A program made the translations under genes and the position numbers. Shown here piece after piece: positions 18,311-55,130 of a DNA stretch of 64,000 bases (position 1 is the stretch's first letter; each line of letters opens with the position of its first letter). The notes under the pieces are model-generated. The model was given only the letters and a program-made list of their open reading frames with translations, was not told the origin of the DNA and searched no databases. This stretch comes from Dicyema japonicum (Eukaryota > Animalia > Dicyemida), in NCBI GenBank assembly GCA_011109175.1, contig RDEW01000019.1:681482-745481 (forward strand), written 5' to 3'.

Positions 18311-18479
18311 GTAGAAAGGGTACTTATTAGAAAGGGCACCGCCACTTTCCTGCAGTAAAATCAATATATGGTATTTTTTAGTTAAAAAATAAATATTTAA
18401 TTAATAATTTCTTACGATTAATTTTTATTTTTTATTTATTACTTTTTGAATTTTTTATCTACAAATATTCCATTTGAAA

Positions 18480-19405
18480 CAAATACGGGCACTCCACAAG
18501 GAGACTCTCTTTCTCCTCTACTATTCACAATTTATTTGGAAGCCGCTATGAGGAACTTAGACCGTCATACCAAGGAAAGACGGAAGAAGTAATCTACGCG
18601 GACGATGTAGACCTAATTTCTGAAGACAAAGAGGTCCTGGAAAACCTATTAGAAAAAGCACCAGATGTACTAGGGAAATGGTTTCTTACTGTGAACAGAG
18701 AAAAAACAGAACTCACAGAGATAAGAAGGATGAGTAACGTCCTAGAAGAGAAGTGGCGACAAGTAAAGAAACTCGGTTCACTTATGGGAGATAGCGAAGA
18801 TATTTTACGTAGGAAAACTCTAGCCAATGCTGCGTTATATAAACTGAAGAATTTATGGCTCAATCAAAAAGGCATCGACACAAAATGAGAATCCTACTAT
18901 ACGACTCATTCATAAAACCCGTACTTTTATATAACGCTGGAACTTGGGCGACCTCATCAGCGGATATGAAAAAACTAGACTCGTTCCACAGAGGTCAACT
19001 GAGAAAAATAACAAACTACTTGGCCTACGAGAATATCTAGGAATGCTTATATATAAGAGTGCAGCACTAGACCTATCAGCTTAGAAGTACTGGAATCCCG
19101 ATGGAGGCTCTTCGGACACGTGCTGAGGATGGAATTAACTTCCCCACCGAACATATCTATGGAAACATACTATGTTAGTGAAGAAGGCCGCTATCGGGGA
19201 AGACCAAGAACAACACTGCCAATAGTCTTACAAAAAGACCTGGTCAGTATAAAAAAAAAAACCTAACAAATGCCGACGACCTGGACAGCATGAGAGCCTT
19301 GGCTAGGAACAGGGGAGCATGGAAAAGGATGACATCTAACCTTGTTTCTTTTGCTGCACATGCGGGGCTATAATTAGTATGGCTCTTGTGAAGTGCTTAA
19401 ATAAA
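18480..19405 (+). mobile_element. 5'-truncated RTE-like LINE (RT C-terminal half to 3' tail)
   Basis: QGDSLSPLLFTIYLE, IYADDVDL, KKLGSL, LLYNAGTW, DSFHRGQLR, RLFGHVLR, RGRPRTTLP, then the 3' tail. Several frameshifts. Confidence 0.88.
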
Positions 19406-24006: not shown

Positions 24007-24504
24007 ACCTAGAGATATGGCTAACGTGGTGTCTTGTGGCTCACCCGAGAAGGTGTCACACATTCCGGAAAGGAACGAAAGAGCCAACAACTTCTCCCCA
24101 CTTCTTGGGGGTTCCCGTAAGCCTAGACCGATACATTGTAGATATTGTCGATTTAAGACGATATCCCACACAAAATGAAAATTATTTTTGGGTAATTATT
24201 TTGCAGTATAATTAACAGATTCTTAGTTTAATTGATCCTTTTTTGAAATTTGGTGTGGTAGAAAGTGCCGTTACCAAATCTGCAAATGGGATTTCCCGAA
24301 TCCTGAGTGGAATTTTTTGAATAATTGGAACCGTAGAAGATGGAAATACGATGAAATTGAAGACGGTGTGAAATTTTAATATTCCGCGACGGGGACGCAA
24401 AAGTAGCTCATAGAAAATACCCTTTATACGACCAAATTTCAACGAAAAAATATACAGTATAAGCCAATTACTAAATTAAAAAAATTTTTTTATAAAATAA
24501 TTTT

Positions 24505-24600
24505 TTTAAACAATTAAACAAATGTCAGTTGAGGAAGCCTGCTGCGTGGATTGCGAACGAGTTCCTTCGGAGTATGGCTATTCCAATCTTTCGTCTTAGC
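24505..24600 (-). mobile_element. CRE-clade retrotransposon extreme 3' end
   Basis: LRRKIGIAILRRNSFAIHAAGFLN* plus A-rich tail; same subfamily as 50016-50122. Confidence 0.7.
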
Positions 24601-30140: not shown

Positions 30141-30189
30141 TTAGTTAAACTTAATTTCTAACGAACAAGTAATCTAATAAATAATTATT

Positions 30190-32075
30190 GTCAATTATGA
30201 ATTTCGATGTATTAATCTAGAAATTGCTCCACTAAAATTAAAAATAAAAATTACCATATAAAATTTACAATTCGATGTGGTACAATAAAAGAAGAAATCA
30301 AAGATGCAAAACTAAACGGTATGTCGTTTTTTCGCTGTGTTGTTCATTATCAATAACTTCTTATTTTCTTCGTCAATAGTGGAAGGTAAATTTGAACATT
30401 CATTTTGTGAAGGATTGTCCGTTTGATTTTCTTCATTGTGTGATGAAGTTTTTATTGAATTTTCAAAATATACTTCGACATTCTCCATATAAGCGGACGT
30501 TTTAAAATCATTTTTATCTTTTGTAATCCCAGATGTTTCTTCAATTTGATTTCATTCATATCATATCAGAAATAACTTTATCTCCAGACTTATTTGTATC
30601 ATTTGAATCACTGATATGGTATTCATAAAATTCATACCTTATTTTTATAGCATTTTCGCTTGTTGTGCTGTATTGCAGATTAATTTCATCATTAGATTTT
30701 TCAATTACCGAACGTAAGTTTGGACAATTATTTTTTGAAGCAATGTCAATGTCTGAAGTATTTTCTTTATGTGTAAATGAATTGATTATTGTATTTTCTA
30801 CTTTTTCTTGGATATTCTCATTGTATATATTGGTTATAATTTCTTTTTCATTTTCAGTTTGTCGTGATGTTTCTTCATTTTTATTATCAATCGACATATT
30901 TTTCATTACATATTTATCTGATTTGACGGAATCTGAGAAATTTTCTGGATAAGAACTTTCTTTTAAAAAATGACTCTGAATTTTCAAATAAAGTTACTTT
31001 ACTTATTGGACCTTTCAAATATTCATATGATTGTACGGAATCTGAGGAATTTCCTGGAAATGAAAATTCGTTTGAGAAATGACTCTTTGAATTTTCAAAT
31101 ACATTCCCTGTACTCATAGGACCTTTCATATTTTCAAATGATTGGACTGAATCTGAGGAATTTCCTGAGGTAAACTTACGCTTGATAAATGACTCTTTGA
31201 ATTTTCAAATACATTCTCTGTACTCATAGGACCTTTCATATTTTCAAATGATTGGACGGAATCAGAGGAATTTCTGGAGGTAAACTTACGATTGATAAAT
31301 GACTCTTTGAATTTTCAAATAAATTCCCTGTACTCATAGGACCTTTCATATTTTCAAATGATTGTACGAATCTGAGGAATTTCCTGGATAAAACTTACGT
31401 TGATAAATGACTCTTTGAATTTTTTAATACATTCCCTGTACTCATTGGACCTTTCAAATATTCATATGATTGGACGGAATCTGAGGAATTTCCTGGAGGC
31501 AAGCTTACGCTTGATAAATGACTCTTTGAATTTTCAAATACATTCCCTGTACTCATAGGACCTTTCAAATATTCAATTGATTGGACGGAATCTGAGGAAT
31601 TTCTTGGATGCAAACTTACGCTTGATAAATGACTCTGAATTTTCAAATACATTCCCTGTACTTCATTGAACCTTTCAAATATTCATTTGATTGGACGGAA
31701 TCTGAGGAATTTCCTGGATAAAACTTTCGTTTAAAATGACTCTTTGAATTTTCAAATAATTTCTGTTACTAGGACCTTTCAAATTTTCAAATGATTGGAC
31801 GGAATCTGAGGAATTTCCTGGAGGCAAACTTACGTTTGATAAATGACTCTTTGAATTTTCAAATACATTCCCTGTACTCATTGGACCTTTCAAATTTTCA
31901 TATGATTGGACGGAATCTAAGGAATTTCCTGGATGCGAGCTTTCGTTTGATAAATGACTCTTGAATTTTCAAATGCATTCCTGTACTCATTCGACCTTTC
32001 AAATTTTCATATGATTGGACGGAATCTAAGGAATTTCCTGGAGGCGAGCTTTCGTTTGATAAATGACTCATTGAA
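30190..32075 (-). CDS. Repeat-protein gene A (Ser/Asn/Glu-rich; about 10 x 37-aa repeats plus two diverged ~100-aa modules)
   Basis: Open frames broken only by single-base homopolymer indels; paralogous to 42085-49885. A 27-nt GT..AG segment lies at 30611-30637. Start and end are approximate. Confidence 0.55.
30960..32075. repeat. 111-bp tandem array (about 10 units)
   Basis: Minus-strand unit encodes GPMSTGNVFENSKSHLSSVSLPPGNSSDSVQSYEYLK. Confidence 0.95.
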
Positions 32076-32469
32076 TTTTGCTTCAGTTATTTAAGCGATA
32101 TTTTAAATTTTCTACAATTTATATTTGTAAAATTATTTGTAATATTATCTTTCAGTAAAATACTTAACGGGCTCTTGGTCTGAAAATAATAAAGTTGTAT
32201 CTATTCGACCAGTCATCGAGGTGACCTAGTCCATACTTTGGTATTCGTTGAGAAATATGTTATTCATGACTTGATGTTTCTACATTTTCTTTAATAGATT
32301 AAATTTTAATTATTTGATTGTTTTACCTCATATATTTCTTACTTATTGACATTTGATAACCAGCTTCATAATGTTTTCCTGACAATTAACGTCACTTCAC
32401 GACCAATAAGGTCACTATATTTTTAAAGGTAAAAAAACATAAATTATTAACAACAAAAAATTAAGAAAC

Positions 32470-34403: not shown

Positions 34404-36223
34404 AAGTGGTTCTTAACTTTTTTTAAGTTAGCGCCCCATTTGATACAATTTTGAAGCTTCAAAATTTCAGCGCCCCGTGAAATGCCAACTGACCAAATTT
34501 TAATATTATCAAATATTACTAATTATTTTTTAAAATTAAAAAATTATTCACAGACAAAACTTTTTTTGTTATATACAGGGTTTTCCTATTTATTTTATGA
34601 CTTGTCATAAAATTTGATAACTGTCAGAAAATTTAATAACTTTGTCAAAATGTTTAATAACTTTGTCAAATATTTATTGATCATTATTTATATTTATTGG
34701 ATCATTAAGTCCCTATAAAAACAAATTTTAGCAAAAAATGAATTAAATGAATAGTTACAAAAACTACTGTATCGAGGATAACCGAAAACTTATTATAAAT
34801 AAATATGAAGCAGGGTTGGCTTATTCAAAAATAAGCGAAGACATCTGTATTAACTACCAGACAGTTGTTTCTATCGTCAAAAAATACAAATATAAAGGAA
34901 GTTTTGCTTTTATAATAAATAATTGTGGACGAAAAAAAACTTAATTCATCGGACATCTAATTTTTGACTAAAAGACTTGAAGAAGATGCTTCATTTATGC
35001 TAAAGAATTTACAAAATTCTTTATTTGATGTGCAAAGAAAAAATGTCTCGACAATGAATAGACTCTATAGACATTTGGATATAGTTTAAGAAGATTCAAT
35101 TTGTACCTATGGCGAGAAATTCTACAATAAATATGGAAGAAAGATATAGATATGCCAGAAACATAATTGAAATTAATAATCAACGGCTTATTTTTATAAA
35201 CGAAATGGGAGTCAATTGTTCGATGAGATCAAATTTGGAAGATCTATAAAAGGAGTTACTCCGAAAAAATGTATTAGAAATATAAAAGAAAAAAATTTCT
35301 CTATTTGTGCTGCTATTTCAGTGGACAGCCTTTTACATTACGAAATCAATTCCTCCCCTTATCGCGCAGAGACGTTCGTTGATTTTGTAATATAGCTTGA
35401 TTATAAGCTTGAACGTGCAGGGAAAAAAGTATGGTTATATGTTATATTTAAGAAATGGTATTGATATGTGACAATGCATCAATTCACATGGGCGATCAAT
35501 TAAAAAATATTGTATTCGGAACTGGTATCCAATTAATTTTTAACGTGTATGAATTGTATTTTTTGCCTCTTATACTCCTCAACTTAATCCAATTGAAGAG
35601 TTTTTTTTCTGTTTGGAAAAATAACATTAAAAAGAAAAATTGTAGGAACTCTGAGGAATTAATAAACGCAATCCGAAACATCGGAGAAATTCCATCAGAT
35701 GTGTGCAATAATTTGTATAACCACATGCGGAGCTATTTAGTTAAAGCATTGGCTAATTTGAAGAATTTTAATTTACAGTTGTTTTTTTCGTGACCTTGAC
35801 AAAGTTATTAAACATTTTGACAAAGTTATTAAAATTGGCTTTTTTTAATTTGACCCTTGACATAGTTATTAAATTTTATGACAAAGTTATTAAATAAATA
35901 GGAAAACCCTGTAAAAACATTTTAGTGACTGCCTTGTGCTTGATAAGAATTTGTCCCTTTATGTCAGCTTCCACAGTTGACAGACTTCGTCTCAAATCTC
36001 CTCTATTCACAATTTGTAATTTATTTCTTTTTTTGTCAAAATACACCCAAAAAATAGAATTAATTAGAAAAGCCCGTGTTAAAAGTACACACAAAAAAAG
36101 TAGAATTAATTTGAAAAGCACGTGATAAATGATTTATAGAACCCAATAAAAATATTTATAATAATTAAAAAATAAAATTTCAGTGCCCCCTAATATGTTC
36201 CAACCCCCCGTTAAGAACCAGTG
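34404..36223. mobile_element. hAT MITE (about 480 bp without the nested element)
   Basis: Ends AAGTGGTTCTTAAC / GTTAAGAACCAGTG; near-perfect 8-bp TSD ATCTAGTC / AACTAGTC (7 of 8). Confidence 0.7.
34576..35911 (+). mobile_element. IS630/Tc1-like DNA transposon, 1336 bp, frameshifted transposase
   Basis: TIRs CAGGGTTTTCCTATTTATTT at both ends, TA TSD, internal aataactttgtca sub-repeats. Contains an HTH region, ICDNASIH and LNPIEEFFSVWK. Confidence 0.93.
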
Positions 36224-37193
36224 AACTAGTCTGTCTTTGCAGATGTGGCGGGAAACTACCCGATTGCGCGACCATCTTTCGTTTTTAAGCCGGAAAACCT
36301 CGTGTCTGGGGTGTCCTTAGCCCCAACACATTCGCTCTTACAGCCAACACCAGAGTGCCTTTGGAGTCTGTTCTGGCGCTGAGAAGGCCGAGAGGTCAAA
36401 ACGGGCAAAGTAAGCTGTCTTATCAGTAGATTTTTGTTTGCTCCGCTCGCAGTTGAAACCTCTGGCTTTTTTGCGCCTGAAACTGGAATTCTTGAGTGGC
36501 CTGAGGAATCGATTTTTGCACGAACAGAAGATACCTGTAAGCGCTGCTGACTATTTGTGCTAATCTCGCTTGCCATCCTGAGATGGAATAGCCACGGGTT
36601 AAGGTGGCCGCTGTATACCTTTTTGTTCATGTTCATTTTGGGAAACGGGATTCGAGTCTGGATAATTTCTGGACTCTACATTTCCTTTTTTGTCCAGAAC
36701 TTTGATGAAGTATCTTAAGCTTATCATTTCATCCAGGCATACAAAAAAGAAGACAAGTGTTTTTATACATCATGAAATGAAGTGACATTTTGCGATAAAA
36801 TCACCAACTCAACCTTCAGACCAACTAATCATTAGGTTAATACTATCCTTCATGGTATATACTATCCTTTTTACTTGTTTTACCATCAAAGTGTCCTTCT
36901 TGTTCGCTTTCATAATTGACAAAGATCATCCACCGTTTTTATTTTTACTCCCAATTTTGGCATAATCTTGATCCTGAGAAAGGAAATCTAATTTACGTCT
37001 AGAATAGATAACAATTTACCGAAAAACTAGTTATTATTTAGAAAATGACTAAAACTCTGAAAGTAATTATTATCAACGGAAGCTAAATGCAGCATGAGAA
37101 ACTATCCGGATGCTTTTTCTTTTCTATTTCACCCTTTCGTTGCCAATTCCTCTCTGAGACGCCCCCAAATCTTTTAAAAATTACCGTCCAAAC

Positions 37194-39323
37194 CAGGGAT
37201 TCTCAACGGCGGCCCCCAGGATTTTGATTTTGGTGCGGCCCGCTTAAAATTATAAAAAATTACATATTTTACATAATGCAGCCGGATTTAACAGTGCTTT
37301 TTCTCTTTTGTTTCTTACATTAAACTTTTTTATGGTTAAAAAATTTTTTACATATTTTTAACTATTGTTTTTAAATTAAATATTTTTTGTATTAAATTTT
37401 AATTAATATCGCTTGTGATGTCTGGAAAACGTGTTAAAAGTAATAGAAAAATTATTCAAGAAAATCGTGCACTTAACCCTGAATGGAAGGAACAATTTTT
37501 CGTTTTTGAAGAAAATGGCAAAGAACATTGCCTGATTTGTCATTTTGTTATACGATGTCTTAAGTTATATAATGTCGAGAGGCATTATATGAAACATTCT
37601 TTAGAATATAATTCATTTCAAGTGAATCAAGAAAAATCAAATTTCTATCTATGAAATCAAATCGCAAACTACACACCACTTTGTTTAAACAGCCCATGTC
37701 ATCAAGATCGCTACAATAGCTTTTTTCAAAATATGTCATCTACTTGCAAAAAATATGAATCCGTATTCAGATGGAGAATTTATTAAGCAAGCTATCCTTA
37801 TATTTACTGAAAAATGTTGTCCTTCAGAAATTAAAAAAAATGTTATAAACTTACAGCTAAGCAATGATACAGTTACTAGGAGAATTGAGAGAATATCTGA
37901 CGATATTCAATGCCAATGCCAGCTACTCACTGAATCCAACTTTTTCGTACACTATTCTATTGCTCTTGACATCACTAAAGATATTAGTGATACAGAACAA
38001 ATGGCTGTGTTTATTCGAGGTGTCATGCCTGATTTCAAAATTTATGAAAAATTTCCCACACTACGTAACTTTTATGGTTCTACTAAAGGAGCTGATATAT
38101 TCTGTGAATTTCGTGATTGCCTTGAAAAGGCACATTTGGATCTTTCAAAAATGTTTTCAATTGTCACAGATGGATTTCTTTCTATGGTTGATAGAAAACT
38201 GGGTTTCAAGGTCTCTTAGCTGGATGGCGAGTAGATGATGAGTTGAGTCCTGTGATTTGGCATCACTGCATACTACATCAAGAAAATTTAGCTGAAAATT
38301 CTATGAAAATGGACCATGTAACAGAAACGGTCATTTCAATCGTAAATTTTATTCGCTCTCGTGCTTTAAATCACCGCAATTTTAAGAAATTTCTCGAGGA
38401 TGTTGATGCTGAGTATGGAGATTTGCTCATGCATAAACCGTACGATGGTTGAGTCGGGCAGTATGTCTAAAGAGGTTGTATAAATTTTAAATAAATAGCG
38501 TTTAGATTTTATGATCTTCTCCCGGAGATTATAAATTTTATTGACAATAAGATATTCTATCTTCAGCTTACTGATAAGGAGTGGATTACGGATTTAGCAT
38601 TTACGGTTGATATTTCTACACATTTGTCGATTTTGAATACTTCTCTGCAGGGTAAGAACAAACTATGTCATAAATTATACGGACTGGTTTCTGCATTTAT
38701 CGAAAAATTACACCTTTTCAAAATACAAATTGCAAGTAGAGTTACCATTCATTTTCCAATACTTTCAAACCACAGGGAAGATGGATCATATGAAAAATAT
38801 ACCTCTGTTGTTAGTGACTTAATCGATGAATTCGAAACGTTTTAATGATTTTAAAGAAGCCCTACCTAACAGCTCCATATGTATATCAGCTAAAGCTAAT
38901 TGAAATGCAGGCAGATTTACAACTTAGCGCGCTATTTAAGTCAAGTGAACTATTGTATTTTTAGAGTCGAATTCCAAAATGGAAATATCCGAACTTGGTC
39001 GATAATGCTAAAAAATGCATTAGTCTTCGGATCAAACGTATGCATGTGAAGCTCTTTTCAGTAAACTTACGCGAATAAAAAGTAAGTATCGAAATTGATT
39101 GACTGATGAACACCTAATTCAACTTTTACGTACATCGTCTTCGAACTTTACTCCTCGTTCGCTAAAATAGTAGACGCCAAGCAAAATCAAGTCCACATTG
39201 ATTCTCTTTAGTACGTAATAAAGCCTTTTTTCTCTAATCAAATAAAATATTTTTTTGTGCGGCCCGCAAAGATACTCTTAATTATCGATTTTGCCCTTGA
39301 GCTAAAAAGGTTGAGAACCCCTG
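37194..39323 (+). mobile_element. Full-length but disrupted hAT element (GTF2IRD2/SPIN-like), inserted in an RTE fragment
   Basis: TIRs CAGGGATTCTCAAC / GTTGAGAACCCCTG; perfect TSD GTCCAAAC. Motifs PYSDGEFIK, YSIALDITKDISDTEQMAVFIRGV, HCILHQENL, NFIRSRALNHR. Confidence 0.95.
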
Positions 39324-39699
39324 GTCCAAACCATTGATAAGCTGATCCTTGGTTGTCTACAGAATCGGGGAGCGTCTGAAGTGAAGAAATCTATCAGACC
39401 ACGCTTGTTTAGATTCTTGGTCCATTCGCAATACATGTCCAAAGAGCTTCCATTATATTTCGAGCAGCTCATCCCCTCGTATATTCTTCTATTTGATATT
39501 CTCAGGGTCCATGGTAGGATAATGTTTGTTTCAAATGGACGATTATGGATGTGAATGTTTAATACAACAAACTCTAACTACGAAAGTGGACATGTTAGTC
39601 AGTTAGTTAAGTTACCTCGTCTCACCAACTTGTAGGAGACTAGCAGCTATTATATATGAGTAGTCTTTGAGCTTGGAAAAGATTAATTTTTTGGGAAGA

Positions 39700-40600
39700 T
39701 TTGTTCCCTGTAAAAGGACGATATCAATATTGGAAATAAAAAAATACAAAAAGTTCAGTGGATTCGTGTAAGGTCCGTTTATGTCGAATTAAATGATGCT
39801 CAGGAATTTATCTTTTTGTTGGATCCGGCAAATGAAAACATTAAAACTAGCCACAATATCCTGAAAAGTAGCCTCAGAGTAGACAGCGGCTGTAATTTTA
39901 TGCCAAATTGATAAGTGAAATTGGCAAAAGCTTGCAGTTTTGAGGTTACCACTTCATTGACATTATCAACCTCGTTTAAGTAAGAATTACCAGTCGCTTC
40001 ATTTAGCAGCTTCACTTTTTCATAAAATTTTAACAAACCTGCTTTTTCAATTTTTGAGCGCAGTTTCCGCCGTGGCGTTTTGACGAATTTGATTTTGCGT
40101 GATTTTCCAAAGAGATGTGTCAGTTAAAGAAATCTCACAGGAGATATTAAGCTGAGAAAAGCATCGGAAATTCCAACAATGCAATAACTACATAAAACAC
40201 ATAAAATTACTGCAATTTTACGTGAAAAGAATTAGCATAGGGAAATATCCTTATTAATGCACGTGCTGTTGATTGAATATATTTTCCTGCTTTCTGAGTT
40301 TTCTAAAATGATTTATTCTTCAGTTATATCGATGTCAATTGTTGCGAGTTTGAACTTTGTGAGGACCGCGATGTAGCCTTTAGAGGGGGTCTCAGACCAC
40401 GTAAAAATAGAATTGACTAGAATAAGGCAAAAACAATTTACAGGTAACCCTATTAAGAAGAGATAACCGAGAACTAAAATCGAAGATATATAAGAGCTTC
40501 ATAAAAACGTCATAACAACTCATTGGCAGAATACAGTCCACGAGACATGTTGGAAGGTGGTTTTGCATATCGCATTCATAGGGATATTCTAAAATATCAA
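39700..40600 (-). other. Possible degraded or intron-rich membrane-protein gene
   Basis: Hydrophobic segments (LGYLFLIGLPVNCFCLILV; LLFRILWLVLMFSF) and GT..AG candidates. Could not be assembled. Confidence 0.25.
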
Positions 40601-40681
40601 AATAAAATAGTAAAGTTAATAAATTAGCAAAAAATATTATTCGCGTAAAAATTATTATTTAAGCAAAATTATTTAAAAATT

Positions 40682-40738
40682 GGCTGCACATGCGTGGGCT
40701 ATAAATATTATGGCTCTCGTGAAAGCGCTAATAATAAT
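40682..40738 (+). mobile_element. Very short RTE 3' tail copy
   Basis: GGCTGCACATGCGTGGGCTATAAATATTATGGCTCTCGTGAAAGCGC(TAA)n. Confidence 0.8.
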
Positions 40739-41089
40739 ATTTGAAAAATAACTACAAAATTACCAGTAATTTGCCAAAATAATAATAAATTTTTATAGAA
40801 AGAGGATAGATCATGGAAAGATGGGCCCAAAATAAAGCAATGCTTTCCAAAATATTACCTACCAGAAGTATCTCTGAATTCGTTCTGAGAGCTTATCAAG
40901 CCTTTTAATAAATAAGTTAGATAAAAGCACTTTCGCGTTCTCCCATAAATATGTGATTACTCAAGGTTTCGCTTGTGGTAAACTCGCTACTATCCATTCT
41001 ACTAGTTCCTCAATGTAGAATGGACAGAGTGAGAATACAACTAGAGAAGTGTCAGCCACTCAAAAGCATAGTTATTTTTCATAAAATAA

Positions 41090-41555
41090 TTAATTGGCGA
41101 TGCAAGAAAACGAGCTGTGGAAGAACTCAAAATATTAAAATGAATTTATTGGTAGCAGTCTGCCAGGACTATTAAAATCGGAAGCTTCATCGTCAGTCAT
41201 GAGATTCCAAAAATAGGAATAGCCATTCACAGATGTTGAATACAAATCCTGTTTTCTAAAATTGTCACAATAACTATTCCAAAGTTTTACAAATAAAACA
41301 GAGATTTTAAATCAAATTAAAAATACACCGTTATCCGCAATTGTGAATAAAACGGATAAGATGTCTTGCAATGTGAAGATAAAACAAGTTGAAGACCTTA
41401 AATAGCTTCTGCAATTTCACTATTGGCGGAAGAAATGCATGGTCAATTATCTCATTAATTAGATTAAATATAATTTGTTATATTTTATTATTTAAAAAAA
41501 GCTCTCCAATTTTTTAATTGCCAAAAAACCAAAAATTGGCTCTTTAGCTTAAAAG
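41090..41555 (+). mobile_element. hAT remnant, duplicate of 29870-30140 and extending further
   Basis: Nearly the same sequence as 29870-30140; continues MSCNVKIKQVEDLK and has a subterminal GGCTCTTT..AAAAGGTT motif. Confidence 0.65.
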
Positions 41556-42084
41556 GTTACAGCAGAATAATACTACAGTTTACGAAGAGCCATATTATCA
41601 ATAGCTATTGCCAGACAGGAGACACAGAATTTATTTAAGGAAAGAACAGTAATGATAACTAATCTATAAGGGAGAATAAGGAATTCACTTCACTTATGTC
41701 TTCTTTTTGTTGTGTAAGTCTTTTTGTAGAAGATTCAGTTCCAAAATAAGATGTTCACTGATAACGGCGGATTCGTCAACCGAAAAGATAGTTAACGAAA
41801 CAAAAATTGTGCAATTTTATCATTTTTAAGTGAATACAAGATAAATGCGAAAAGTAAAAGTTTAGAAAAGTAGAACAGAATTACAGTAGAAAACAGACGA
41901 TGTAATGAACGTAAATTATAATAATTAAGGAAACATAAAATTAGAGAAATATAGACAAAGAAAGACATCAATGAATGTTTTTTTAAAAAAAGATCGATAA
42001 AGAAAAATATACTGATGTATTAATTTTGAAAAATTAAGTTTAGTTAAACTTATATTCTAACGAAAAGAAACTAATTAATTATTG

Positions 42085-45000
42085 TTAATTATGAATTTCG
42101 ATGTCGATTGTATCGCTTTGCTGATCATTATCAATAGCTTCTATAGATTCTTCATCGATGGTTGAAGGTAAATTTGAACATACATTTATTGAATGAACGA
42201 CATGGTCCGATTGATTTTCTTCATCGGAGGAAAAAAGGTTTAATTGAAATTTCAAAATTTACTTCGACATTCTCATTATAAGAAGACGTATTAAAATCAT
42301 TTTCATCTATTGTAATCCCAGATGTTTGTTCAATTTGATTTTCAATTAATGTAGTCATGTTCATATCAGAAATAAATTTATCTCCAGAGTTATTATATTG
42401 ATTTGAATCACTGATATCGTCATCATAACATTTTTACCTTGTTTTTAGTGCATTATCGTTTGTTGTACTGTATTGTTGATTAAATCGCTCATTTGATTCT
42501 TGGCTGATGATGAAGGGTATAATTGATGGACAGTTAATATAAGAGTGATTTTTTTCAAATGTTGATGTTTCGATAAATTGTTCTTCACCAGTTTCTTCTA
42601 AATTTTCATAATAGCCTGATATTTTATGTGCATTAATTTCGTCAGTTTCATTATTTTGAAAATCATTTAGTGTAGTCATTTTCAGATCAGAAATAACTTT
42701 ATCTCCAGAGTTATTAAATTCATTTGAATCACTGATATCGTCATCATAACATTTTTACCTTGTTTTTAGTGCATTATCGTTTGTTGTACTGTATTGTTTA
42801 ATAAATCGCTCATTAGATTCTTGGCTGATGATGAAGGGTATAATTGATGGACAGTTAATATAAGAGTGATTTTTTTCAAATGTTGATGTTTCGATAAATT
42901 GTTCTTCACCAGTTTCTTCTAAATTTTCATAATTGCCTGATATTTTATGTGCATTAATTTCGTCAGTTTCATTATTTTGAAAATCATTTAGTGTAGTCAA
43001 TTTTCAGATCAGAAATAACTTTATCTCCAGAGTTATTATTTGATTTGAATCACTGATATCGTCATCATAACATTTTTACCTTGTTTTAGTGCATTATCGT
43101 TTGTTGTACTGTATTGTTTAATAAATCGCTCATTAGATTCTTGGCTGATGATGAAGGGTATAATTGATGGACAGTTAATATAAGAGTGATTTTTTTCAAA
43201 TGTTGATGTTTCGATAAATTGTTCTTCACCAGTTTCTTCTAAATTCTCATAATTGCCTGATATTTTATGTGCATTAATTTCGTCAGTTTCATTATTTTGA
43301 AAATCATTTAATGTAGTCATTTTCAGATCAGAAATAACTTTATCTCCAGAGTTATTAGTTTGATTTGAATCACTGATATCGTCATCATAACATTTTTACC
43401 TTGTTTTTAGTGCATTATCGTTTGTTGTACTGTATTGTTTAATAAATCGCTCATTAGATTCTTGGCTGATGATGAAGGGTATAATTGATGGACAGTTAAT
43501 ATAAGAGTGATTTTTTTCAAATGTTGATGTTTCGATAAATTGTTCTTCACCAGTTTCTTCTAAATTCTCATAATTGCCTGATATTTTATGTGCATTAATT
43601 TCGTCAGTTTCATTATTTTGAAAATCATTTATGTAGTCATTTTCAGATCAGAAATAACTTTATCTCCAGAGTTATTAGTTTGATTTGAATCACTGATATC
43701 GTCATCATAACATTTTTACCTTGTTTTTAGTGCATTATCGTTTGTTGTACTGTATTGTTTAATAAATCGCTCATTAGATTCTTGGCTGATGATGAAGGGT
43801 ATAATTGATGGACAGTTAATATAAGAGTGATTTTTTTCAAATGTTGATGTTTCGATAAATTGTTCTTCACCAGTTTCTTCTAAATTCTCATAATTGCCTG
43901 ATATTTTATGTGCATTAATTTCGTCAGTTTCATTATTTTGAAAATCATTTAATGTAGTCATTTTCAGATCAGAAATAACTTTATCTCCAGAGTTATTAGT
44001 TTGATTTGAATCACTGATATCGTCATCATAACATTTTTACCTTGTTTTTAGTGCATTATCGTTTGTTGTACTGTATTGTTTAATAAATCGCTCATTAGAT
44101 TCTTGGCTGATGATGAAGGGTATAATTGATGGACAGTTAATATAAGAGTGATTTTTTTTCAAATGTTGATGTTTCGATAAATTGTTCTTCACCAGTTTCT
44201 TCTAAATTCTCATAATTGCCTGATATTTTATGTGCATTAATTTCGTCAGTTTCATTATTTTGAAAATCATTTATGTAGTCATTTTCAGATCAGAAATAAC
44301 TTTATCTCCAGAGTTATTAGTTTGATTTGAATCACTGATATCGTCATCATAACATTTTTACCTTGTTTTTAGTGCATTATCGTTTGTTGTACTGTATTGT
44401 TTAATAAATCGCTCATTAGATTCTTGGCTGATGATGAAGGGTATAATTGATGGACAGTTAATATAAGAGTGATTTTTTTCAAATGTTGATGTTTCGATAA
44501 ATTGTTCTTCACCAGTTTCTTCTAAATTCTCATAATTGCCTGATATTTTATGTGCATTAATTTCGTCAGTTTCATTATTTGAAAATCATTTAATGTAGTC
44601 ATTTTCAGATCAGAAATAACTTTATCTCCAGAGTTATTAGTTTGATTTGAATCACTGATATCGTCATCATAACATTTTTACCTTGTTTTTAGTGCATTAT
44701 CGTTTGTTGTACTGTATTGTTTAATAAATCGCTCATTAGATTCTTGGCTGATGATGAAGGGTATAATTGATGGACAGTTAATATAAGAGTGATTTTTTTC
44801 AAATGTTGATGTTTCGATAAATTGTTCTTCACCAGTTTCTTCTAAATTCTCATAATTGCCTGATATTTTATGTGCATTAATTTCGTCAGTTTCATTATTT
44901 GAAAATCATTTAGTGTAGTCATTTTCAGATCAGAAATAACTTTATCTCCAGAGTTATTAGTTTGATTTGAATCACTGATATCGTCATCATAACATTTTTA

Positions 45001-48000
45001 CCTTGTTTTTAGTGCATTATCGTTTGTTGTACTGTATTGTTTAATAAATCGCTCATTAGATTCTTGGCTGATGATGAAGGGTATAATTGATGGACAGTTA
45101 ATATAAGAGTGATTTTTTTCAAATGTTGATGTTTCGATAAATTGTTCTTCACCAGTTTCTTCTAAATTCTCATAATTGCCTGATATTTTATGTGCATTAA
45201 TTTCGTCAGTTTCATTATTTGAAAATCATTTAGTGTAGTCATTTTCAGATCAGAAATAACTTTATCTCCAGAGTTATTAGTTTGATTTGAATCACTGATA
45301 TCGTCATCATAACATTTTTACCTTGTTTTTAGTGCATTATCGTTTGTTGTACTGTATTGTTTAATAAATCGCTCATTAGATTCTTGGCTGATGATGAAGG
45401 GTATAATTGATGGACAGTTAATATAAGAGTGATTTTTTTCAAATGTTGATGTTTCGATAAATTGTTCTTCAACAGTTTCTTCTAAATTCTCATAATTGCC
45501 TGATATTTTATGTGCGTTATTTTCTTCAGTTTCTTTATTTTGAACTTCATTTAATGTAGTCATGTTCATATCAGAAATAACTTTATCTCCAGATTTAATA
45601 GTTTCATTTGAATCACTGATATCGTCATCATAAAATTTTTACCTTGTTTTTATTTCATTTTCGCTTGTTCTACTGTATTGTTGATTAATTTGCTCATTTG
45701 ATTCTTCGCTGATGTTAGAAGGTAGATTTGATGTAGAGCAAATATCTGAGGAATTTTTGACAAATGTTGATGTTTCGATTGATAGTTCTTCAACTGTTTC
45801 TTCTACATTCTCAAAACAGACAGATGTTATATGTGCGTTATTTTCTTCAGTTTCTTTATTTTGAACTTCATTTAATGTAGTCATGTTCATATCAGAAATA
45901 ACTTTATCTCCAGATTTATTAGTTTCATTTGAATCACTGATATCGTCATCATAAAATTTTTACCTTGTTTTTATTTCATTTTCGCTTGTTGTACTGTATT
46001 GTTGATTAATTTGCTCATTTGATTCTTCGCTGATGTTGAAGGGTAGATTTGATGTAGAGCTAATATCTGAGGAATTTTTGTCAAATGTTGATGTTTTCGA
46101 TAAATTGTTCTTCACCAGTTTCTTCTAAATTCTCATAATGCCTGATATTTTATGACTGCGTTATTTTCTTCAGTTTCTTTATTTTGAACTTCATTTAATG
46201 TAGTCATGTTCATATCAGAAATAACTTTATCTCCAGATTTATTAGTTTCATTTGAATCACTGATATCGTCATCATAAAATTTTTACCTTGTTTTTATTTC
46301 ATTTTCGCTTGTTGTACTGTATTGTTGATTAATTTGCTCATTTGATTCTTCGCTGATGTTAGAAGGTAGATTTGATGTAGAGCAAATATCTGAGGAATTT
46401 TTGTCAAATGTTGATGTTTCGATTGATAGTTCTTCAACTGTTTCTTCTACATTCTCATAATTGCCTGATATTTTATGTGCATTAATTTCGTCAGTTTCAT
46501 TATTTTGAAAATCATTTAGTGTAGTCATTTTCAGATCAGAAATAACTTTATCTCCAGAGTTATTAGTTTGATTTGAATCACTGATATCGTCATCATAAAA
46601 TTTTTACCTTGTTTTTATTTCATTTTCGCTTGTTGTACTGTATTGTTGATTAATTTGCTCATTTGATTCTTCGCTGATGATGAAGGGTATAATTGATGGA
46701 CAGTTAATATAAGAGTGATTTTTTTCAAATGTTGATGTTTCGATAAATTGTTCTTCACCAGTTTCTTCTAAATTCTCATAATTGCCTGATATTTTATGTG
46801 CATTAATTTCGTCAGTTTCATTATTTTTGAAAATCATTTAGTGTAGTCATTTTCAGATCAGAAATAACTTTATTATAGTAAGTATTAGTATTGATTTGAA
46901 TCACTGATATCGTCATCATAACATTTTTACCTTGTTTTTAGTGCATTATCGTTTGTTGTACTGTATTGTTTAATAAATCGCTCATTAGATTCTTGGCTGA
47001 TGATGAAGGGTATAATTGATGGACAGTTAATATAGAGTGATTTTTTTCAAATGTTGATGTTTCGATAAATTGTTCTTCACCAGTTTCTTTCTAAATTCTC
47101 ATAATTGCCTGATATTTTATGTGCATTAATTTCGTCAGTTTCATTATTTTTGAAAATCATTTAGTTGTAGTCATTTTCAGATCAGAAATAACTTTATCTC
47201 CAGAGTTATTAGTTTGATTTGAATCACTGATATCGTCATCATAACATTTTTACCTTGTTTTTAGTGCATTATCGTTTGTTGTACTGTATTGTTTAATAAA
47301 TCGCTCATTAGATTCTTGGCTGATGATGAAGGGTATAATTGATGGACAGTTAATATAAGAGTGATTTTTTTCAAATGTTGATGTTTCGATAAATTGTTCT
47401 TCACCAGTTTCTTCTAAATTCTCATAATTGCCTGATATTTTATGTGCATTAATTTCGTCAGTTTCATTATTTTGAAAATCATTTAGTGTAGTCATTTTCA
47501 GATCAGAAATAACTTTATCTCCAGAGTTATTAAATTCATTTGAATCACTGATATCGTCATCATAACATTTTTACCTTGTTTTTAGTGCATTATCGTTTGT
47601 TGTACTGTATTGTTTAATAAATCGCTCATTAGATTCTTGGCTGATGATGAAGGGTATAATTGATGGACAGTTAATATAAGAGTGATTTTTTTCAAATGTT
47701 GATGTTTCGATAAATTGTTCTTCACCAGTTTCTTCTAAATTCTCATAATTGCCTGATATTTTATGTGCATTAATTTCGTCAGTTTCATTATTTTGAAAAT
47801 CATTTAGTGTAGTCATTTTCAGATCAGAAAATAACTTTATCTCCAGAGTTATTAAATTCATTTGAATCACTGATATCGTCATCATAACATTTTTACCTTG
47901 TTTTTTAGTGCATTATCGTTTGTTGTACTGTATTGTTTAATAAATCGCTCATTAGATTCTTGGCTGATGATGAAGGGTATAATTGATGGACAGTTAATAT

Positions 48001-49885
48001 AAGAGTGATTTTTTTCAAATGTTGATGTTTCGATAAATTGTTCTTCACCAGTTTCTTCTAAATTTTCATAATAACCTGATATTTTATGTGCATTAATTTC
48101 GTCAGTTTCATTATTTTGAAAATCATTTAATGTAGTCATTTTCAGATCAGAAATAACTTTATCTCCAGAGTTATTAAATTCATTTGAATCACTGATATCG
48201 TCATCATAACATTTTTACTTGTTTTTAGTGCATTATCGTTGTGTTGTACTGTATTGTTTAATAAATCGCTCATTAGATTCTTGGCTGATGATGAAGGGTA
48301 TAATTGATGGACAGTTAATATAAGAGTGATTTTTTTCAAATGTTGATGTTTCGATAAATTGTTCTTCACCAGTTTTCTTCTAAATTCTCATAATTGCCTG
48401 ATATTTTTATGTGCATTAATTTCGTCAGTTTCATTATTTTGAAAATCATTTATGTAGTCATTTTCAGATCAGAAATAACTTTATCTCCAGAGTTATTAGT
48501 TTCATTTGAATCACTGATATCGTCATCATAACATTTTACCTTGTTTTTAGTGCATTATCGTTTGTTGTACTGTATTGTTTAATAAATCGCTCATTAGATT
48601 CTTGGCTGATGATGAAGGGTATAATTGATGGACAGTTAATATAAGAGTGATTTTTTTCAAATGTTGATGTTTCGATAAATTGTTCTTCACCAGTTTCTTC
48701 TAAATTCTCATAATTGCCTGATATTTTATGTGCATTAATTCGTCAGTTTCATTATTTTGAAAATCATTTAGTGTAGTCATTTTCAGATCAGAAATAACTT
48801 TATCTCCAGAGTTATTAGTTTTTATTCGAATCACTCAAATATTCATATGATTGGACGGAATCCGAGGAATTTCCTGGAGCCATACTTTCGTTTGAGAAAT
48901 AACTCTTTGAATTTTCAAATACATTTCCTGTACTTATTGTATTTTTCAAATATTCATTTGATTGTTCGAAATCTGAATAATTTTCTGGAAGCGAACTTAT
49001 GCTTGATAATTGACTCTTCGAATTTTCAAATACATTTCCTTTACTCATAGCACCTTTCAAATATTCACATGATTGGACTGAATCCGAGGAATTTCCTGAG
49101 GCAAACTTTCGTTTGAAAAAGAACTCTTTGATTTTTCAATTACATTTCCTGTACTCATTGGACCTTTCAAATATTCATTTGATTGGGAAGAATTTCCTGG
49201 AGGCGAACTTATGCTTGATAAATGACTTTTTGAATTTTCAAATAAATTTCCTGTACTCATAGGACCTTTCAAATATTCATATGATTGGACGGAATCCGAA
49301 GAATTTCCTGGAGGTAAACTTTCGTTTGAGAAATAACTCATTGAATTTTCAAATACATTTCCTGTACTCATAGGACCTTTCAAATATTCATATGATTGGA
49401 CGGAATCCGAGGAATTTCCTGGAGGCAAACTTTCGTTTGAGAAATAACTCTTTGAATTTTCAGATCATTTCCTGTATTCATTGGACCTTTCAAATATTCA
49501 TTTGATTGGGCGAAATCTGAAGAATTTTCTGGAGGCGAACTTATGCTTGATAAATGACTCTTTGAATTTCCACATACATTTCCTGTAATCATAGCACCTT
49601 TCAAATATTCACATGATTGGACGGAATCCGAGGAATTTCCTGGAGGCAAACTTTCGTTTGAGAAAGAATTCTTTGAATTTTCAAATACATTTCCTGTATT
49701 CATTGGACCTTTCAAATATTCATTTGATTGGAAGAATTTCCTGGAGGCGAACTTATGCTTGATAAATGACTTTTTGAATTTTCAAATACATTTCCTGTAC
49801 TCATTGGACCTTTCAAATATTCATATGATTGAACGGAATCTGAAGAATTTCCTGGAGGCGAGCTTACGTTTGATAAATGACTCAT
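42085..49885 (-). CDS. Giant repeat-protein gene B (about 9 x 37-aa plus 20 x 98-aa spliced units plus terminal module), predicted
   Basis: Paralogue of gene A. Each 321-bp unit is open except for one TAA inside a 27-nt GT..AG segment and scattered homopolymer indels. Terminal exon ends IEIHN* at 42085. Start codon unresolved. Confidence 0.55.
42350..48835. repeat. 321-bp tandem array, 20 units
   Basis: Marker ctgatatcgtcatcata counted 20 times from 42411 to about 48515, at a spacing of 320-324 bp. Confidence 0.97.
48835..49885. repeat. 111-bp tandem array (about 9 units, two shortened)
   Basis: Same unit family as 30960-32075. Confidence 0.95.
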
Positions 49886-50015
49886 TAAATATTGCTTCAG
49901 TTATTGAAACTATATTTTAAATTTTCTACAATTTATATTTGTAAAATTATTTTGTAATATTATCTTTCAGTAATTTACTTAACGGGCTTTTGGTCTAGAA
50001 ATAATAAAGTTATAT

Positions 50016-50122
50016 TGTCATACTCCGAGATTGGAATTTGAATATCCATACTCCGAGGGAACTCGTTCGCAATCCACGCAGCAGGCTTCCTCAACTGACA
50101 TTTTTTTAATTGTTAAAAAAAG
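50016..50122 (+). mobile_element. 107-bp 5'-truncated CRE retrotransposon insertion
   Basis: Absent from the paralogous site (about 32192-32200). TSD AGTTATAT at 50008-50015 and 50123-50130; encodes ILRGNSFAIHAAGFLN*; A-rich tail. Confidence 0.85.
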
Positions 50123-53158: not shown

Positions 53159-53401
53159 ATGGGCTCTGTGAGTGATGAAAAATATCACGCGGCTTTACGT
53201 AGGGATTGGGTTGGGAGAGAACAGTTGAGCGTCATTGTGAGCTCAATATCGAGATTAGTTGACATCATGAATAAATTTGGTATAATTTAAACCCTTAAAA
53301 ATATAGAGGCTTCCTCAATGTGCAGAATATCAGCACTTAAAGAAAAACTCTGCCAAATCGAAGCTAAACTTAGTTACATTGAAAATATTTTTTATAATTA
53401 A
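53159..53401 (+). CDS. BRK1: BRICK1/HSPC300, SCAR/WAVE complex subunit; one 27-nt intron
   Basis: Intron 53280-53306. Product MGSVSDEKYHAALRRDWVGREQLSVIVSSISRLVDIMNKFEASSMCRISALKEKLCQIEAKLSYIENIFYN matches the remembered family pattern DWxxRE...SSIxxxxDFxNxF.xS.xxR...L.EKL..xE....YIE. Not in the ORF track. Confidence 0.92.
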
Positions 53402-53408
53402 ATGTTAG

Positions 53409-55130
53409 TTAAACAGGTTTTACTCCGTATTCTAGTAGAATAGTGTTTATAAAAGAGTAGTAAAGTAACCCAATCGCTAGTAGCCTAAAATAAAAAGTTG
53501 AATTACCACAAGAAAACTGTTTTCACGTAATTCGACTTTTTGCTTCCCTTTTTAGAAACTTTTTTCAAGTTTTGGTCAAACAAATCATTTTCGGTCAAAA
53601 TCTTTCGAGTCAAAGATTTTTTCTCGTTCAACAGATTAGTCTGTAGTTTATTTCTCCATTCAAGTTCGAAGATATTTTAGCGGTTTTAAGCTTGTATTCT
53701 GTTTTTTCTGGTATTTCATCATCCGAAATGATATCTTGGCAATAATTGTTTAAATTCCGATTTTCATTTCCCGTCCAATCGAAAATAATTTCTTGTAAAT
53801 CATCATTCTGCTTAGTATTATAAGCGGATTTGTTAGAGTAATTAGCAGGTAATCCATTTGCCATTGGATTTGTGTCAATTTTGACGTCACTTAGCATTTC
53901 TTTGCTTATAAAGTCATTTTCATTGCCCAGAATTCCATTTTTGGATTCTGAATATTTTTCTTTAGTGTTTTCCTCATCTTGAATATTAATTAAGTTGGTT
54001 TCCAAGGGAATGTCCTTTAATTGGTCATTATTTCCGGAATAATAGGAGGGGACCGAATCAATACCATAATTATCAGTGGGTTCAGAGGAACTATTGAAGG
54101 CATCTACTTTTTCTGAGTAATTTTCTTCGTCGGTGCTATATTTTTCTGACCCTTGGAAATCTTTGAATGATTCCCAAATAGGTAAACTATCCGTCGAGTC
54201 CTGAATCAAAAAATCCTTAGTGTCTGGAAGTGTTCTTTCCAAAGCTGAGTCAGGAGTTATAGAGTTTTTGTGAAATTCTTGGGCTCTCTTATCAAATATA
54301 GACAGTTCAGAAACATTCACTCCTGATTCTTGGATGGATTCGCATAAATATTCAAAATATTCAACGGAATTAGAAGAATATTTAACAGATCCACCTCTTT
54401 TAGGGTTTGGAGACGAGTTCTTGTTGCAAAATAGCGTATCGTCGTCGGAAAACAAATCCATTGACGCATATTTCATGTCTGTTTTCAACGAAGCTGAGTT
54501 AAATCCAAATTTCTTGGGTTTGTATGAGGAATATATATCGTCAGGTTCTATCTGATCCAATTCATCGAAATCTATTTTTCCTTTCATGTCTTTTATTTTC
54601 TCATTTTTCTCGGCAAACGGCTTTAAATCAGTTTTTTGATCGTTCTGAATCGATTTGTCAAAAATGTTCAAATCCAAATTAACTTTCCATGTTTTCTAGG
54701 TCATCAAGTTTCTAAATAAACCCCGAGATTGGAAAGAAATATTATATTGTTCCATGAAGTGCTCAGTCCTTCTATAAGTCGCAATATTGACTCCCAAGTG
54801 TCGCTGTCCTCTGGTAAATTAATCTTTTTGGCTTGAAAATAGAGTTGGTTAAGTTTATTAGGATAATCCGCTGTAAGCAATTTAATATCCTGAGATTAAG
54901 TATTTCTGAATACTGTGAGTGAAAGCGACTGCCTTTTCTCAGCCAGAACCTCCATTTTTGCTAGTCTTTTTCGAAGCTGTTCGTATGCAATCAGAAATTG
55001 GTTCAACGATCGTCTGCACGAGGCGTCTGATATTTCTTTGAACTATGGAATTTGAAATAAAAAAATAGCTGTTACAGAGCTTATTAGATCGCTTAGTTGA
55101 TTGTGCTTGACTTGAATGCTGCATTGGACT
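53409..55130 (-). CDS. Unidentified protein: helical N-terminus, long acidic low-complexity region, possible C-terminal membrane anchor
   Basis: The 349-aa ORF 53628-54677 extends upstream through 26-, 24- and 33-nt GT..AG introns in one frame. Extension downstream needs 1-2 single-base corrections and a 22-nt intron (53485-53506). Both ends uncertain. Confidence 0.6.

What the first reader, a model, noticed from the sequence alone, without database searches (positions are those of the whole stretch)
42085..48835. Giant tandem-repeat gene in which every 321-bp unit carries its own stop-containing 27-nt micro-intron
Seen: on the minus strand each unit reads as about 81 codons, then an in-frame TAA. 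That TAA sits in ..ACAAG|GTAAAAATGTTATGATGACGATATCAG|TGATTCA.., a 27-nt GT..AG segment (first copy at 42411-42437). All 20 units keep GT and AG; one is 26 nt. Removing the segment gives a continuous 98-codon unit (..NALKTSDSNQ..). The size matches the introns of VPS54 and BRK1 in this window. Paralogue A has a 27-nt GT..AG segment at the same place (30611-30637, GTATGAATTTTATGAATACCATATCAG) without a stop. Inference: an exon+intron cassette was multiplied 20-fold, giving a protein of over 2000 aa that needs 20 near-identical splicing events. Retention of any one intron would truncate the protein at a module boundary or trigger NMD, a possible splicing-controlled length ladder. The stop may alternatively be a nonsense change rescued by intronisation before the expansion.
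Basis: partly seen in the sequence, partly recalled or inferred. Interest (0 to 1): 0.85.

Follow-up and report, generated by a model that had tools for sequence, protein, structure and literature searches.

The report
Tandem repeat gene with twenty micro-introns
A 321-base piece of a gene that spans an ordinary 27-base intron was copied about 20 times head to tail in an animal with ultra-short introns, but as assembled the reading frame is broken about 30 times and no RNA data could show that it is spliced or expressed.

Summary
The array is real. It has 20.2 copies of a 321-bp unit at 96% identity, and short-read depth supports that copy number. All 20 copies carry a GT..AG segment (19 of 27 nt, one of 26 nt) with an in-frame TAA.

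Unit lengths run from 320 to 323 bp. Only about 8 units are frame-intact, and the whole gene has roughly 30 frame breaks.

Indirect evidence favours a true micro-intron:
- BRK1 in this window has a homology-supported 27-nt intron that also contains a TAA.
- Paralogue A keeps GT, AG and the 27-nt length at the same site.
- Read in register, no unit has a stop, although 66 substitution variants exist (P about 0.01).
- The intron and its junctions are the least variable part of the unit.

The TAA follows automatically from a GTAA donor in phase 2, and stops in 3n mini-introns are a known pattern. Most indels found in only one unit look like long-read consensus errors. One 3' frame break, however, also appears in short-read contigs.

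No RNA run held the locus, so splicing and expression remain untested, and the "length ladder" idea has no support. Other first-stage notes (unchecked) report similar exon-plus-micro-intron arrays elsewhere in this genome. Ordinary mechanism, modest interest.

The parts
42342..48835 (-). Array of 20.2 copies of a 321-bp unit. Each unit is a 294-nt exon plus a 27-nt GT..AG segment.
   Evidence: Tandem Repeats Finder and unit alignment. Short-read unit contig at about 13x single-copy depth, against 13.1x expected from the assembled array.
48514..48539 (-). Intron copy 1, 26 nt (A5 run read as A4)
48192..48218 (-). Intron copy 2, 27 nt. One G of the upstream AAG|GT junction is missing.
47870..47896 (-). 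Intron copy 3, 27 nt
47548..47574 (-). Intron copy 4
47227..47253 (-). Intron copy 5
46904..46930 (-). Intron copy 6
46581..46607 (-). Intron copy 7 (variant with T at intron position 9, as in paralogue A)
46260..46286 (-). Intron copy 8 (T variant)
45937..45963 (-). Intron copy 9 (T variant)
45616..45642 (-). Intron copy 10 (T variant)
45295..45321 (-). Intron copy 11
44975..45001 (-). Intron copy 12
44655..44681 (-). Intron copy 13
44335..44361 (-). Intron copy 14
44014..44040 (-). Intron copy 15
43693..43719 (-). Intron copy 16
43373..43399 (-). Intron copy 17
43053..43079 (-). Intron copy 18
42732..42758 (-). Intron copy 19
42411..42437 (-). Intron copy 20 (last), followed by the unique 3' exon
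48835..49890 (-). 5' array of 111-bp (37-codon) Ser/Asn/Gly/Pro-rich repeats, 9.7 copies. The likely start ATG is at 49884-49886. The array has three frame-changing differences between units.
42088..42410 (-). Unique 3' exon. It is open in two pieces, with a +1 frame break relative to paralogue A at 42224-42258. There is a TGA at 42221-42223 and the ancestral-frame TAA is at 42088-42090.
   Evidence: The short-read contig 42102-42348 shows no gap between 42228 and 42348.
30340..32086 (-). Paralogue A: 110-bp repeats (10.6 copies), one exon X, the intron and a last exon. Relative to B, 11 nt are missing just after the intron.
30611..30637 (-). Paralogue A's 27-nt GT..AG segment at the homologous site, without an in-frame stop. 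It differs from B's at 6 of 27 positions.
53280..53306 (+). Control: homology-supported 27-nt intron of BRK1 (gene 53159-53401), with an in-frame TAA

Best explanation
The locus is paralogue B of a duplicated, lineage-specific gene. The gene encodes an acidic protein rich in Asn, Ser, Thr and Glu that is probably disordered.

The ancestral layout is the one paralogue A still shows: 37-codon repeats, then exon X, then a 27-nt phase-2 intron, then the last exon. In B, a 321-bp segment was duplicated in tandem. Its breakpoints lay inside exon X and about 70 nt into the last exon. This created a chimeric 294-nt exon (98 codons, phase 2 at both ends) flanked by two copies of the same intron. Unequal crossing-over then raised the number to 20.

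The older unit type (units 6-9) is closer to paralogue A. About 15 near-identical units are a recent burst.

Each 27-nt segment is an ordinary U2-type micro-intron of this ultra-short-intron animal. Its TAA is simply letters 2-4 of a GTAA donor read in phase 2. It acts at most as the generic fail-safe seen in 3n mini-introns.

Shown: the architecture, the copy number, the homology to A, and the control intron in BRK1. Inferred: splicing, translation through the array, and that most unit-private 1-bp indels are long-read consensus errors. Open: whether today's copy is still one intact reading frame of about 2,400 codons.
For: - Array and copy number.
- Homology of the unit's two halves to A's exon X and last exon, and of both flanks.
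- A aligns best and longest to units 6-8, and these share the intron's T variant and 'TSEN' with A.
- BRK1 has a 27-nt intron whose removal gives a colinear match to human BRICK1.
- Ultra-short introns are published for the two candidate source lineages, with medians of 22-27 nt for the myxobolids (PMC13644364).
- The frame is kept open. Read in register, all 19 full units have 0 stops, although there are 66 distinct substitution variants and 4.2 nonsense changes expected (P(0) = 0.01). Only 3.3% of random placements of the 50 differences between units 8 and 14 leave the exon open. The other five frames are closed.
- The only 27-nt windows of the unit with one variant or fewer are those over the intron and its two junctions.
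- Unit-private changes are 16 indels against 20 substitutions, most of which sit in two clustered patches. Shared changes are 4 indels against 46 substitutions. About 18 of 26 indels lie in base runs. This pattern is typical of consensus error.
- Short-read contigs differ from the window in unique flanks mainly by gaps.
Against: - There is no RNA evidence. The five runs that hold the locus show no joint at the intron, and short-read contigs run unspliced into or across it (X2 42471-42737; X5 42550-42800). These runs are probably DNA.
- As assembled, about 30 frame breaks interrupt the gene.
- Some indels are shared by neighbouring units (units 10-12; units 4-5), as real mutations spread by unit duplication would be.
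- The +1 break at 42224-42258 seems present in short-read contigs too (from the distances to the contig end).
- Paralogue A also has frame lesions.
- dN/dS between unit types is 1.1-1.3, so there is no purifying selection on the residues.
- A GT..AG bracket of a stop is not rare by chance.
- No homologue, domain or confident fold was found.
Confidence: 0.6

Rival explanations
1. The locus is a dead gene or a gene-derived satellite. Paralogue B lost function and the 321-bp unit then expanded as non-coding tandem DNA. The open frame merely reflects the youth of the copies. The frame-shifting indels are real, and nothing is translated past the first break.
For: - About 30 frame breaks as assembled.
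- Indels shared between adjacent units.
- The 3' +1 break appears corroborated by short-read contigs.
- Paralogue A is also damaged.
- dN/dS is about 1.2.
- No run classed as RNA holds the locus. X8, a 12-Mb run with the same species label, holds none of its words.
Against: - There are no in-register stops despite 66 substitution variants, some 17% diverged (P about 0.01-0.03).
- The intron and its junctions are the most conserved part of the unit.
- Private changes are indel-biased, as expected of consensus error.
- The protein and run collections largely lack this organism, so absence is uninformative.
Confidence: 0.25
2. The 27-nt segment is not an intron. It was coding sequence in the ancestor (as read through in paralogue A) and GT..AG is a coincidence. 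B acquired a TAT-to-TAA nonsense change before the expansion, so B's protein ends in the first unit.
For: - The segment is 3n, and A's copy has no stop, so it can be read through.
- Six per cent of random stops can be bracketed by a 27-nt GT..AG.
Against: - The length equals the verified BRK1 intron.
- GT, AG and the length are kept between A and B, while 6 of 27 inner letters differ and all of them change the residue. That is about the synonymous rate.
- The frame stays open downstream of the TAAs.
- The segment is the least variable part of the unit, while the exon evolves freely.
Confidence: 0.1
3. One reading: the 20 identical stop-carrying introns form a regulated device. Graded intron retention sets a ladder of truncated proteins or tunes mRNA level through nonsense-mediated decay.
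For: The only support is the architecture itself: 20 identical 3n introns with a stop.
Against: - The stop follows automatically from a GTAA donor in phase 2.
- In-frame stops in 3n mini-introns are a genome-wide fail-safe pattern in other lineages (PMC5014332). BRK1's intron here has one too.
- There is no RNA or protein evidence, and the gene may not even be intact.
Confidence: 0.05

Closest known systems
Ultra-short spliceosomal introns of dicyemids (Dicyema japonicum) and myxobolid myxozoans (PMC13644364; PMC6736024)
   Same: GT..AG ends with a 'GTa' donor, a length of 27 nt, and several such introns per gene. BRK1 in this window has one that is supported by homology.
   Different: Here one intron has been copied 20 times within a single gene. 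Splicing of these copies has not been observed.
Excess of in-frame stops in 3n mini-introns, read as a fail-safe against intron retention (Jaillon et al. 2008, as cited in PMC5014332; also Yarrowia, PMC2911113)
   Same: A 3n intron with an in-frame stop, so that retention would end translation.
   Different: The pattern was described in ciliates and yeast, not in this lineage. Paralogue A's 3n intron has no stop, so the rule is not absolute here. The stop in B is part of the donor consensus itself.
Coding tandem arrays whose repeat unit contains exon(s) plus intron(s), such as the human LPA kringle IV-2 array; and intron multiplication by internal tandem duplication (my own knowledge, not checked here)
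   Same: Head-to-tail copies of a unit that carries a whole exon and an intron with matching phases, expanded by unequal crossing-over.
   Different: The unit is only 321 bp and its intron only 27 nt. The exon is a chimera of two ancestral exons. The protein is an orphan, low-complexity sequence.
Other first-stage notes on this genome (s1-319448, s1-293790, s1-293791; unchecked)
   Same: They report satellite-like arrays that read as exon plus micro-intron repeat genes.
   Different: They lie at other loci and have other unit sizes (49 bp, 102 bp, 2 kb). None has been followed up.

Membership tests
U2-type GT-AG ultra-short intron | GT at the 5' end and AG at the 3' end | tested here: met
   All 20 copies and paralogue A. 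The chance level for a 27-nt frame-preserving bracket of a stop is 6%.
U2-type GT-AG ultra-short intron | Length within the genome's intron size class | tested here: met
   27 nt equals the homology-supported BRK1 intron in the same window. Published medians are 22-27 nt for the myxobolids, with similarly short introns in D. japonicum (PMC13644364).
U2-type GT-AG ultra-short intron | Absent from the mature RNA | not testable with these tools
   No RNA run holds the locus. The runs laid show only the unspliced form and look like DNA. The junction 24-mer is absent from the metagenome contigs, but so is an exon 33-mer.
U2-type GT-AG ultra-short intron | Conserved position in a relative, with free inner sequence | tested here: met
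   Paralogue A has the same site and the same length. Six of 27 inner letters differ, which is about dS.
Coding tandem array with an exon-plus-intron unit | Head-to-tail copies, each with a whole exon and intron of matching phase | tested here: met
   The consensus unit is 321 bp: a 294-nt exon (98 codons, phase 2 at both ends) plus a 27-nt intron.
Coding tandem array with an exon-plus-intron unit | One continuous reading frame through all units after splicing | tested here: inconclusive
   As assembled, only about 8 of 20 units are intact. In register, none has a stop. Whether the indels are real could not be settled.
Pseudogene or gene-derived satellite | Frame-shifting lesions | tested here: inconclusive
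   Many are present in the assembly. Most look like consensus errors. One at the 3' end seems real.
Pseudogene or gene-derived satellite | Nonsense substitutions at the neutral rate | tested here: not met
   None observed against 4.2 expected among 66 variants, P = 0.01.
Regulated intron retention coupled to nonsense-mediated decay | Retained and spliced isoforms that vary with condition | not testable with these tools
   No RNA data were available.

The most novel reading that the evidence does not exclude
The array is an intact, expressed gene whose 20 identical stop-carrying 27-nt introns are spliced with graded efficiency. One locus would then yield a ladder of C-terminally truncated repeat proteins. 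At the least, it would be a natural 20-fold internal reporter of per-intron splicing fidelity in an animal with a minimal splice-site code.
Probability: 0.05. Interest if true: 0.7.

Novelty: new member of a known kind. Interest (0 to 1): 0.3.

Why it matters
If the locus is expressed, it is a tidy example of how intron number can rise 20-fold in one step-wise process (tandem duplication across an existing intron) in a genome whose introns are near the physical minimum. Twenty identical introns in one transcript would also allow the splicing error rate per intron to be read from single long cDNA molecules.

In practice, the locus shows that satellite-like arrays in this genome can hide coding repeats. 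It also shows that the assembly's repeat regions carry many 1-bp indels, which will break gene models. Otherwise the parts are ordinary: a normal micro-intron, a stop that is part of the donor consensus, and an orphan low-complexity protein.

Tried and rejected
- **Alternative genetic code (TAA as sense).** Open-frame statistics with reduced stop sets were uninformative in this AT-rich DNA. BRK1 ends at a TAA at the expected length and has a TAA inside its intron, so I assumed the standard code.
- **My own micro-intron gene finder.** A dynamic-programming finder and an 'open-frame-joining' intron length spectrum were both too noisy. GT..AG gave no excess over control dinucleotide pairs, so I derived no window-wide intron statistics.
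- **VPS54.** Ten open-frame pieces gave no Pfam match, and I did not pursue it.
- **Homology.**
  - HMMER of the unit against 1.84 billion representatives gave three spurious low-complexity hits.
  - The word-based search found nothing.
  - A 355-aa open frame from the same window does not even find itself, so these collections lack this genome.
  - Pfam found nothing.
  - The Atlas search gave two high-scoring unnamed clusters, but recognition was low.
  - AlphaFold gave pLDDT 51.
- **RNA evidence.** Both run searches returned the same five runs of unknown kind. When laid, they behave as DNA.
- **A correction of my own reading.** I first read the 246-letter short-read contig over the 247 window letters 42102-42348 as repairing the T6 run and the 3' frame. 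The distances to the contig end place the missing letter in 42102-42227 instead, so I withdrew that inference.
- **Depth test of the indels.** Expected multiplicity is 13.1x as assembled and 14.1x with the indels masked, against about 13x observed. The test cannot discriminate.
- **Source organism.** Undecided between Dicyema japonicum and a myxobolid myxozoan. D. japonicum fits on GC 36.7%, 49% repeats, 377 scaffolds and Nextera mate-pair libraries, and a Nextera adapter appears in an X3 contig (PMC6736024). Henneguya salminicola fits on a PacBio plus Racon assembly and a median intron of 27 nt (PMC13644364).
Full report
**What is there**

On the minus strand, Tandem Repeats Finder reports one array at 42342-48835 with period 321, 20.2 copies and 96% matches. 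It is directly preceded, on the gene's 5' side, by a second array of 111-bp units at 48835-49890. A related locus, paralogue A, has 10.6 copies of the 110-bp unit at 30919-32079 but only one copy of the 321-like segment.

A search for the proposed segment finds it in every unit. Nineteen copies are 27 nt. The first copy is 26 nt because an A5 run reads as A4. Copy 2 keeps GT and AG but has lost one G at the exon side of the donor.

In frame-intact units, the exon between two segments is 294 nt, or 98 codons, and its first letter completes a split codon. The intron phase is therefore 2 on both sides, and the spliced junction reads ..ALKT|SDSN...

Short-read contigs from an independent data set carry the consensus unit at about 13 times single-copy depth. 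The assembled array predicts 13.1 times for the same words. The array and its copy number are therefore not assembly artefacts.

- Units are 320-323 bp long.
- The alignment shows 26 small indels in the 19 complete units.
- Only about 8 of 20 units are uninterrupted frames of 106 codons from stop to stop.
- The first unit is out of frame with the 111-bp repeats.
- The 111-bp array has three frame-changing differences.
- The unique 3' exon has a +1 break relative to paralogue A between 42224 and 42258.

As assembled, no protein of over 2000 aa is encoded. If every break were an error, ATG 49884-49886 to TAA 42088-42090 minus the 20 introns would give about 2,420 codons.

**Is the 27-nt segment an intron?**

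The GT..AG bracket alone is weak. In this window, 18% of arbitrary stop triplets can be bracketed by a frame-preserving GT..AG of 21-30 nt, and 6% by exactly 27 nt. Four further observations carry the case.

1. The genome does use such introns. BRK1 (53159-53401, + strand) has a 27-nt GT..AG segment at 53280-53306 containing an in-frame TAA. Exon 1 matches human BRICK1 residues 9-39 (E = 9.5e-4). Exon 2 matches residues 44-65 (weakly, E = 1.1). The match is colinear and gap-free only if exactly these 27 nt are removed. Introns of this size are published for the two candidate source lineages (PMC13644364; PMC6736024).
2. Paralogue A has GT, AG and 27 nt at the homologous site. Six of its 27 letters differ. 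This is about the synonymous divergence of the flanking exons (dS about 0.23, dN/dS about 0.6), and every one of the six differences would change a residue if the segment were translated.
3. Read in register, with indel columns masked, none of the 19 complete units has a stop. Yet there are 66 distinct substitution variants, of which 4.2 would be expected to be nonsense (P of none = 0.01). For units 8 and 14, which differ at 50 of 291 sites, only 3.3% of random placements of the same changes leave the exon open. The other five frames are full of stops. Units far inside the array have therefore been kept open, which makes sense only if translation passes the upstream TAAs.
4. The intron has one substitution variant in 27 sites, against 66 in 294 for the exon. 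The only 27-nt windows of the unit with one variant or fewer are those over the intron and its two junctions. Meanwhile the exon evolves with dN/dS of 1.1-1.3.

Together these make a genuine micro-intron the best reading. I put it near 75%.

**The stop is not a special device**

A phase-2 intron that begins GTAA reads xxG TAA. The stop is the donor consensus itself. Paralogue A has GTAT at the same place and therefore no stop.

Enrichment of in-frame stops in 3n mini-introns is a described general pattern, read as a fail-safe against retention (PMC5014332, citing Jaillon et al. 2008; PMC2911113). Two unchecked first-stage notes report the same pattern across this genome. Paralogue A shows that it is not absolute.

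**Origin of the array**

The first 70 nt or so of the unit's exon are homologous to the start of the last exon. The last 75 nt or so before the intron are homologous to the end of A's exon X. Both flanks of A and B are homologous at 86-91%.

The unit is therefore a segment that spans a pre-existing intron, with breakpoints inside the two neighbouring exons. Tandem duplication created a chimeric exon between two copies of the intron, and unequal crossing-over did the rest.

Units 6-9 form a diverged type. They align to A better and for longer (165 nt at 85%, against 115 nt). They also share A's T at intron position 9 and its 'TSEN' motif. They are the older copies, and about 15 near-identical units are a recent burst.

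**Real frame breaks or assembly errors?**

For error:
- Changes private to one unit are 16 indels against 20 substitutions, and most of those substitutions sit in two small patches.
- Changes shared by several units are 4 indels against 46 substitutions.
- About 18 of 26 indels lie in runs of one base.
- Short-read contigs differ from the window in unique flanks mostly by gaps, for example 4 gaps and 0 mismatches in 138 nt, and 10 gaps and 1 mismatch in 218 nt.
- There are no nonsense substitutions.

For real lesions:
- The same A-run change is shared by units 10-12, and another by units 4-5.
- The short-read contig over 42102-42348 has its single missing letter somewhere in 42102-42227, not in the T6 run. 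This follows from the distances to the contig end, which I calibrated on other contigs. The +1 break of the 3' exon therefore seems real.
- Paralogue A lacks 11 nt just after its intron.

The depth test cannot discriminate: 13.1 times against 14.1 times expected, with about 13 times observed. I conclude that most private indels are technical, but that the locus may carry at least one true lesion.

**Expression**

Both searches for sequencing runs returned the same five runs of unknown kind. When laid, they show no joint at the intron, and their contigs run into or across it unspliced. They behave as DNA. One small run with the same species label holds none of the locus's words, but its kind is unknown. 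The protein collections do not contain this genome at all, and neither do the metagenome contigs. Splicing and transcription therefore remain untested.

**The protein**

A unit has 17 acidic and 7 basic residues, 40% Asn+Ser+Thr+Gln, and four N-x-S/T sites. The likely N-terminus (MSHLSN..) shows no obvious signal peptide (read by eye). There is no Pfam family, no homologue and no confident fold (pLDDT 51). I commit only to 'long acidic disordered repeat protein, lineage-specific'.

**Verdict**

The architecture is confirmed and explained by ordinary processes. The intron reading is likely but unproven. The 'giant protein needing 20 splicing events' is possible only if the assembly's indels are errors. 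The 'length ladder' has no support. Similar arrays are noted (unchecked) elsewhere in this genome. This is a new member of a known kind, of modest interest.

Noticed in passing
window 37200-39330: Interspersed element at about 100 times single-copy depth in short-read contigs (word depth 27,000-61,000 against about 400). Its open frames resemble a hAT-type transposase by eye, but two pieces gave no Pfam match.
   Followed up: partly
window 40686-40879: Narrow spike of short-read word depth (136,590 in X1, roughly 300 times single copy). It marks a very abundant short repeat just downstream of the gene.
   Followed up: no
window 49990-50115 and 24501-24587: The 5' flank of paralogue B carries an insertion of about 115 nt that paralogue A lacks. 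Eighty-seven nt of it recur, inverted, at 24501-24587 with 94% identity. It is a short interspersed element that may sit in B's promoter or 5' UTR.
   Followed up: partly
window 30150-30335: The 3' end of paralogue A has an extra stretch of about 110 nt relative to B. It would add a hydrophobic stretch (..FSFASLISSFIV..) and contains a 23-nt GT..AG candidate intron.
   Followed up: no
window 18478-18885 (+), 8363-9124 (-), 35452-35790 (+): Fragments of mobile elements: reverse transcriptase (RVT_1, E = 2e-6), an endonuclease/exonuclease/phosphatase domain (E = 2e-8), and a weak DDE_3 transposase match. The window is rich in transposons.
   Followed up: partly
window 37000-42350 (unique stretches): Short-read contigs differ from the window by many single-letter gaps with few substitutions. 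This suggests residual long-read indel errors in AT-rich parts of this assembly, which matters for any gene model in this genome.
   Followed up: partly
window 53631-54695 (-): The longest open frame of the window (355 codons, next to BRK1) has no Pfam family and no relative in 5.8 billion proteins.
   Followed up: partly
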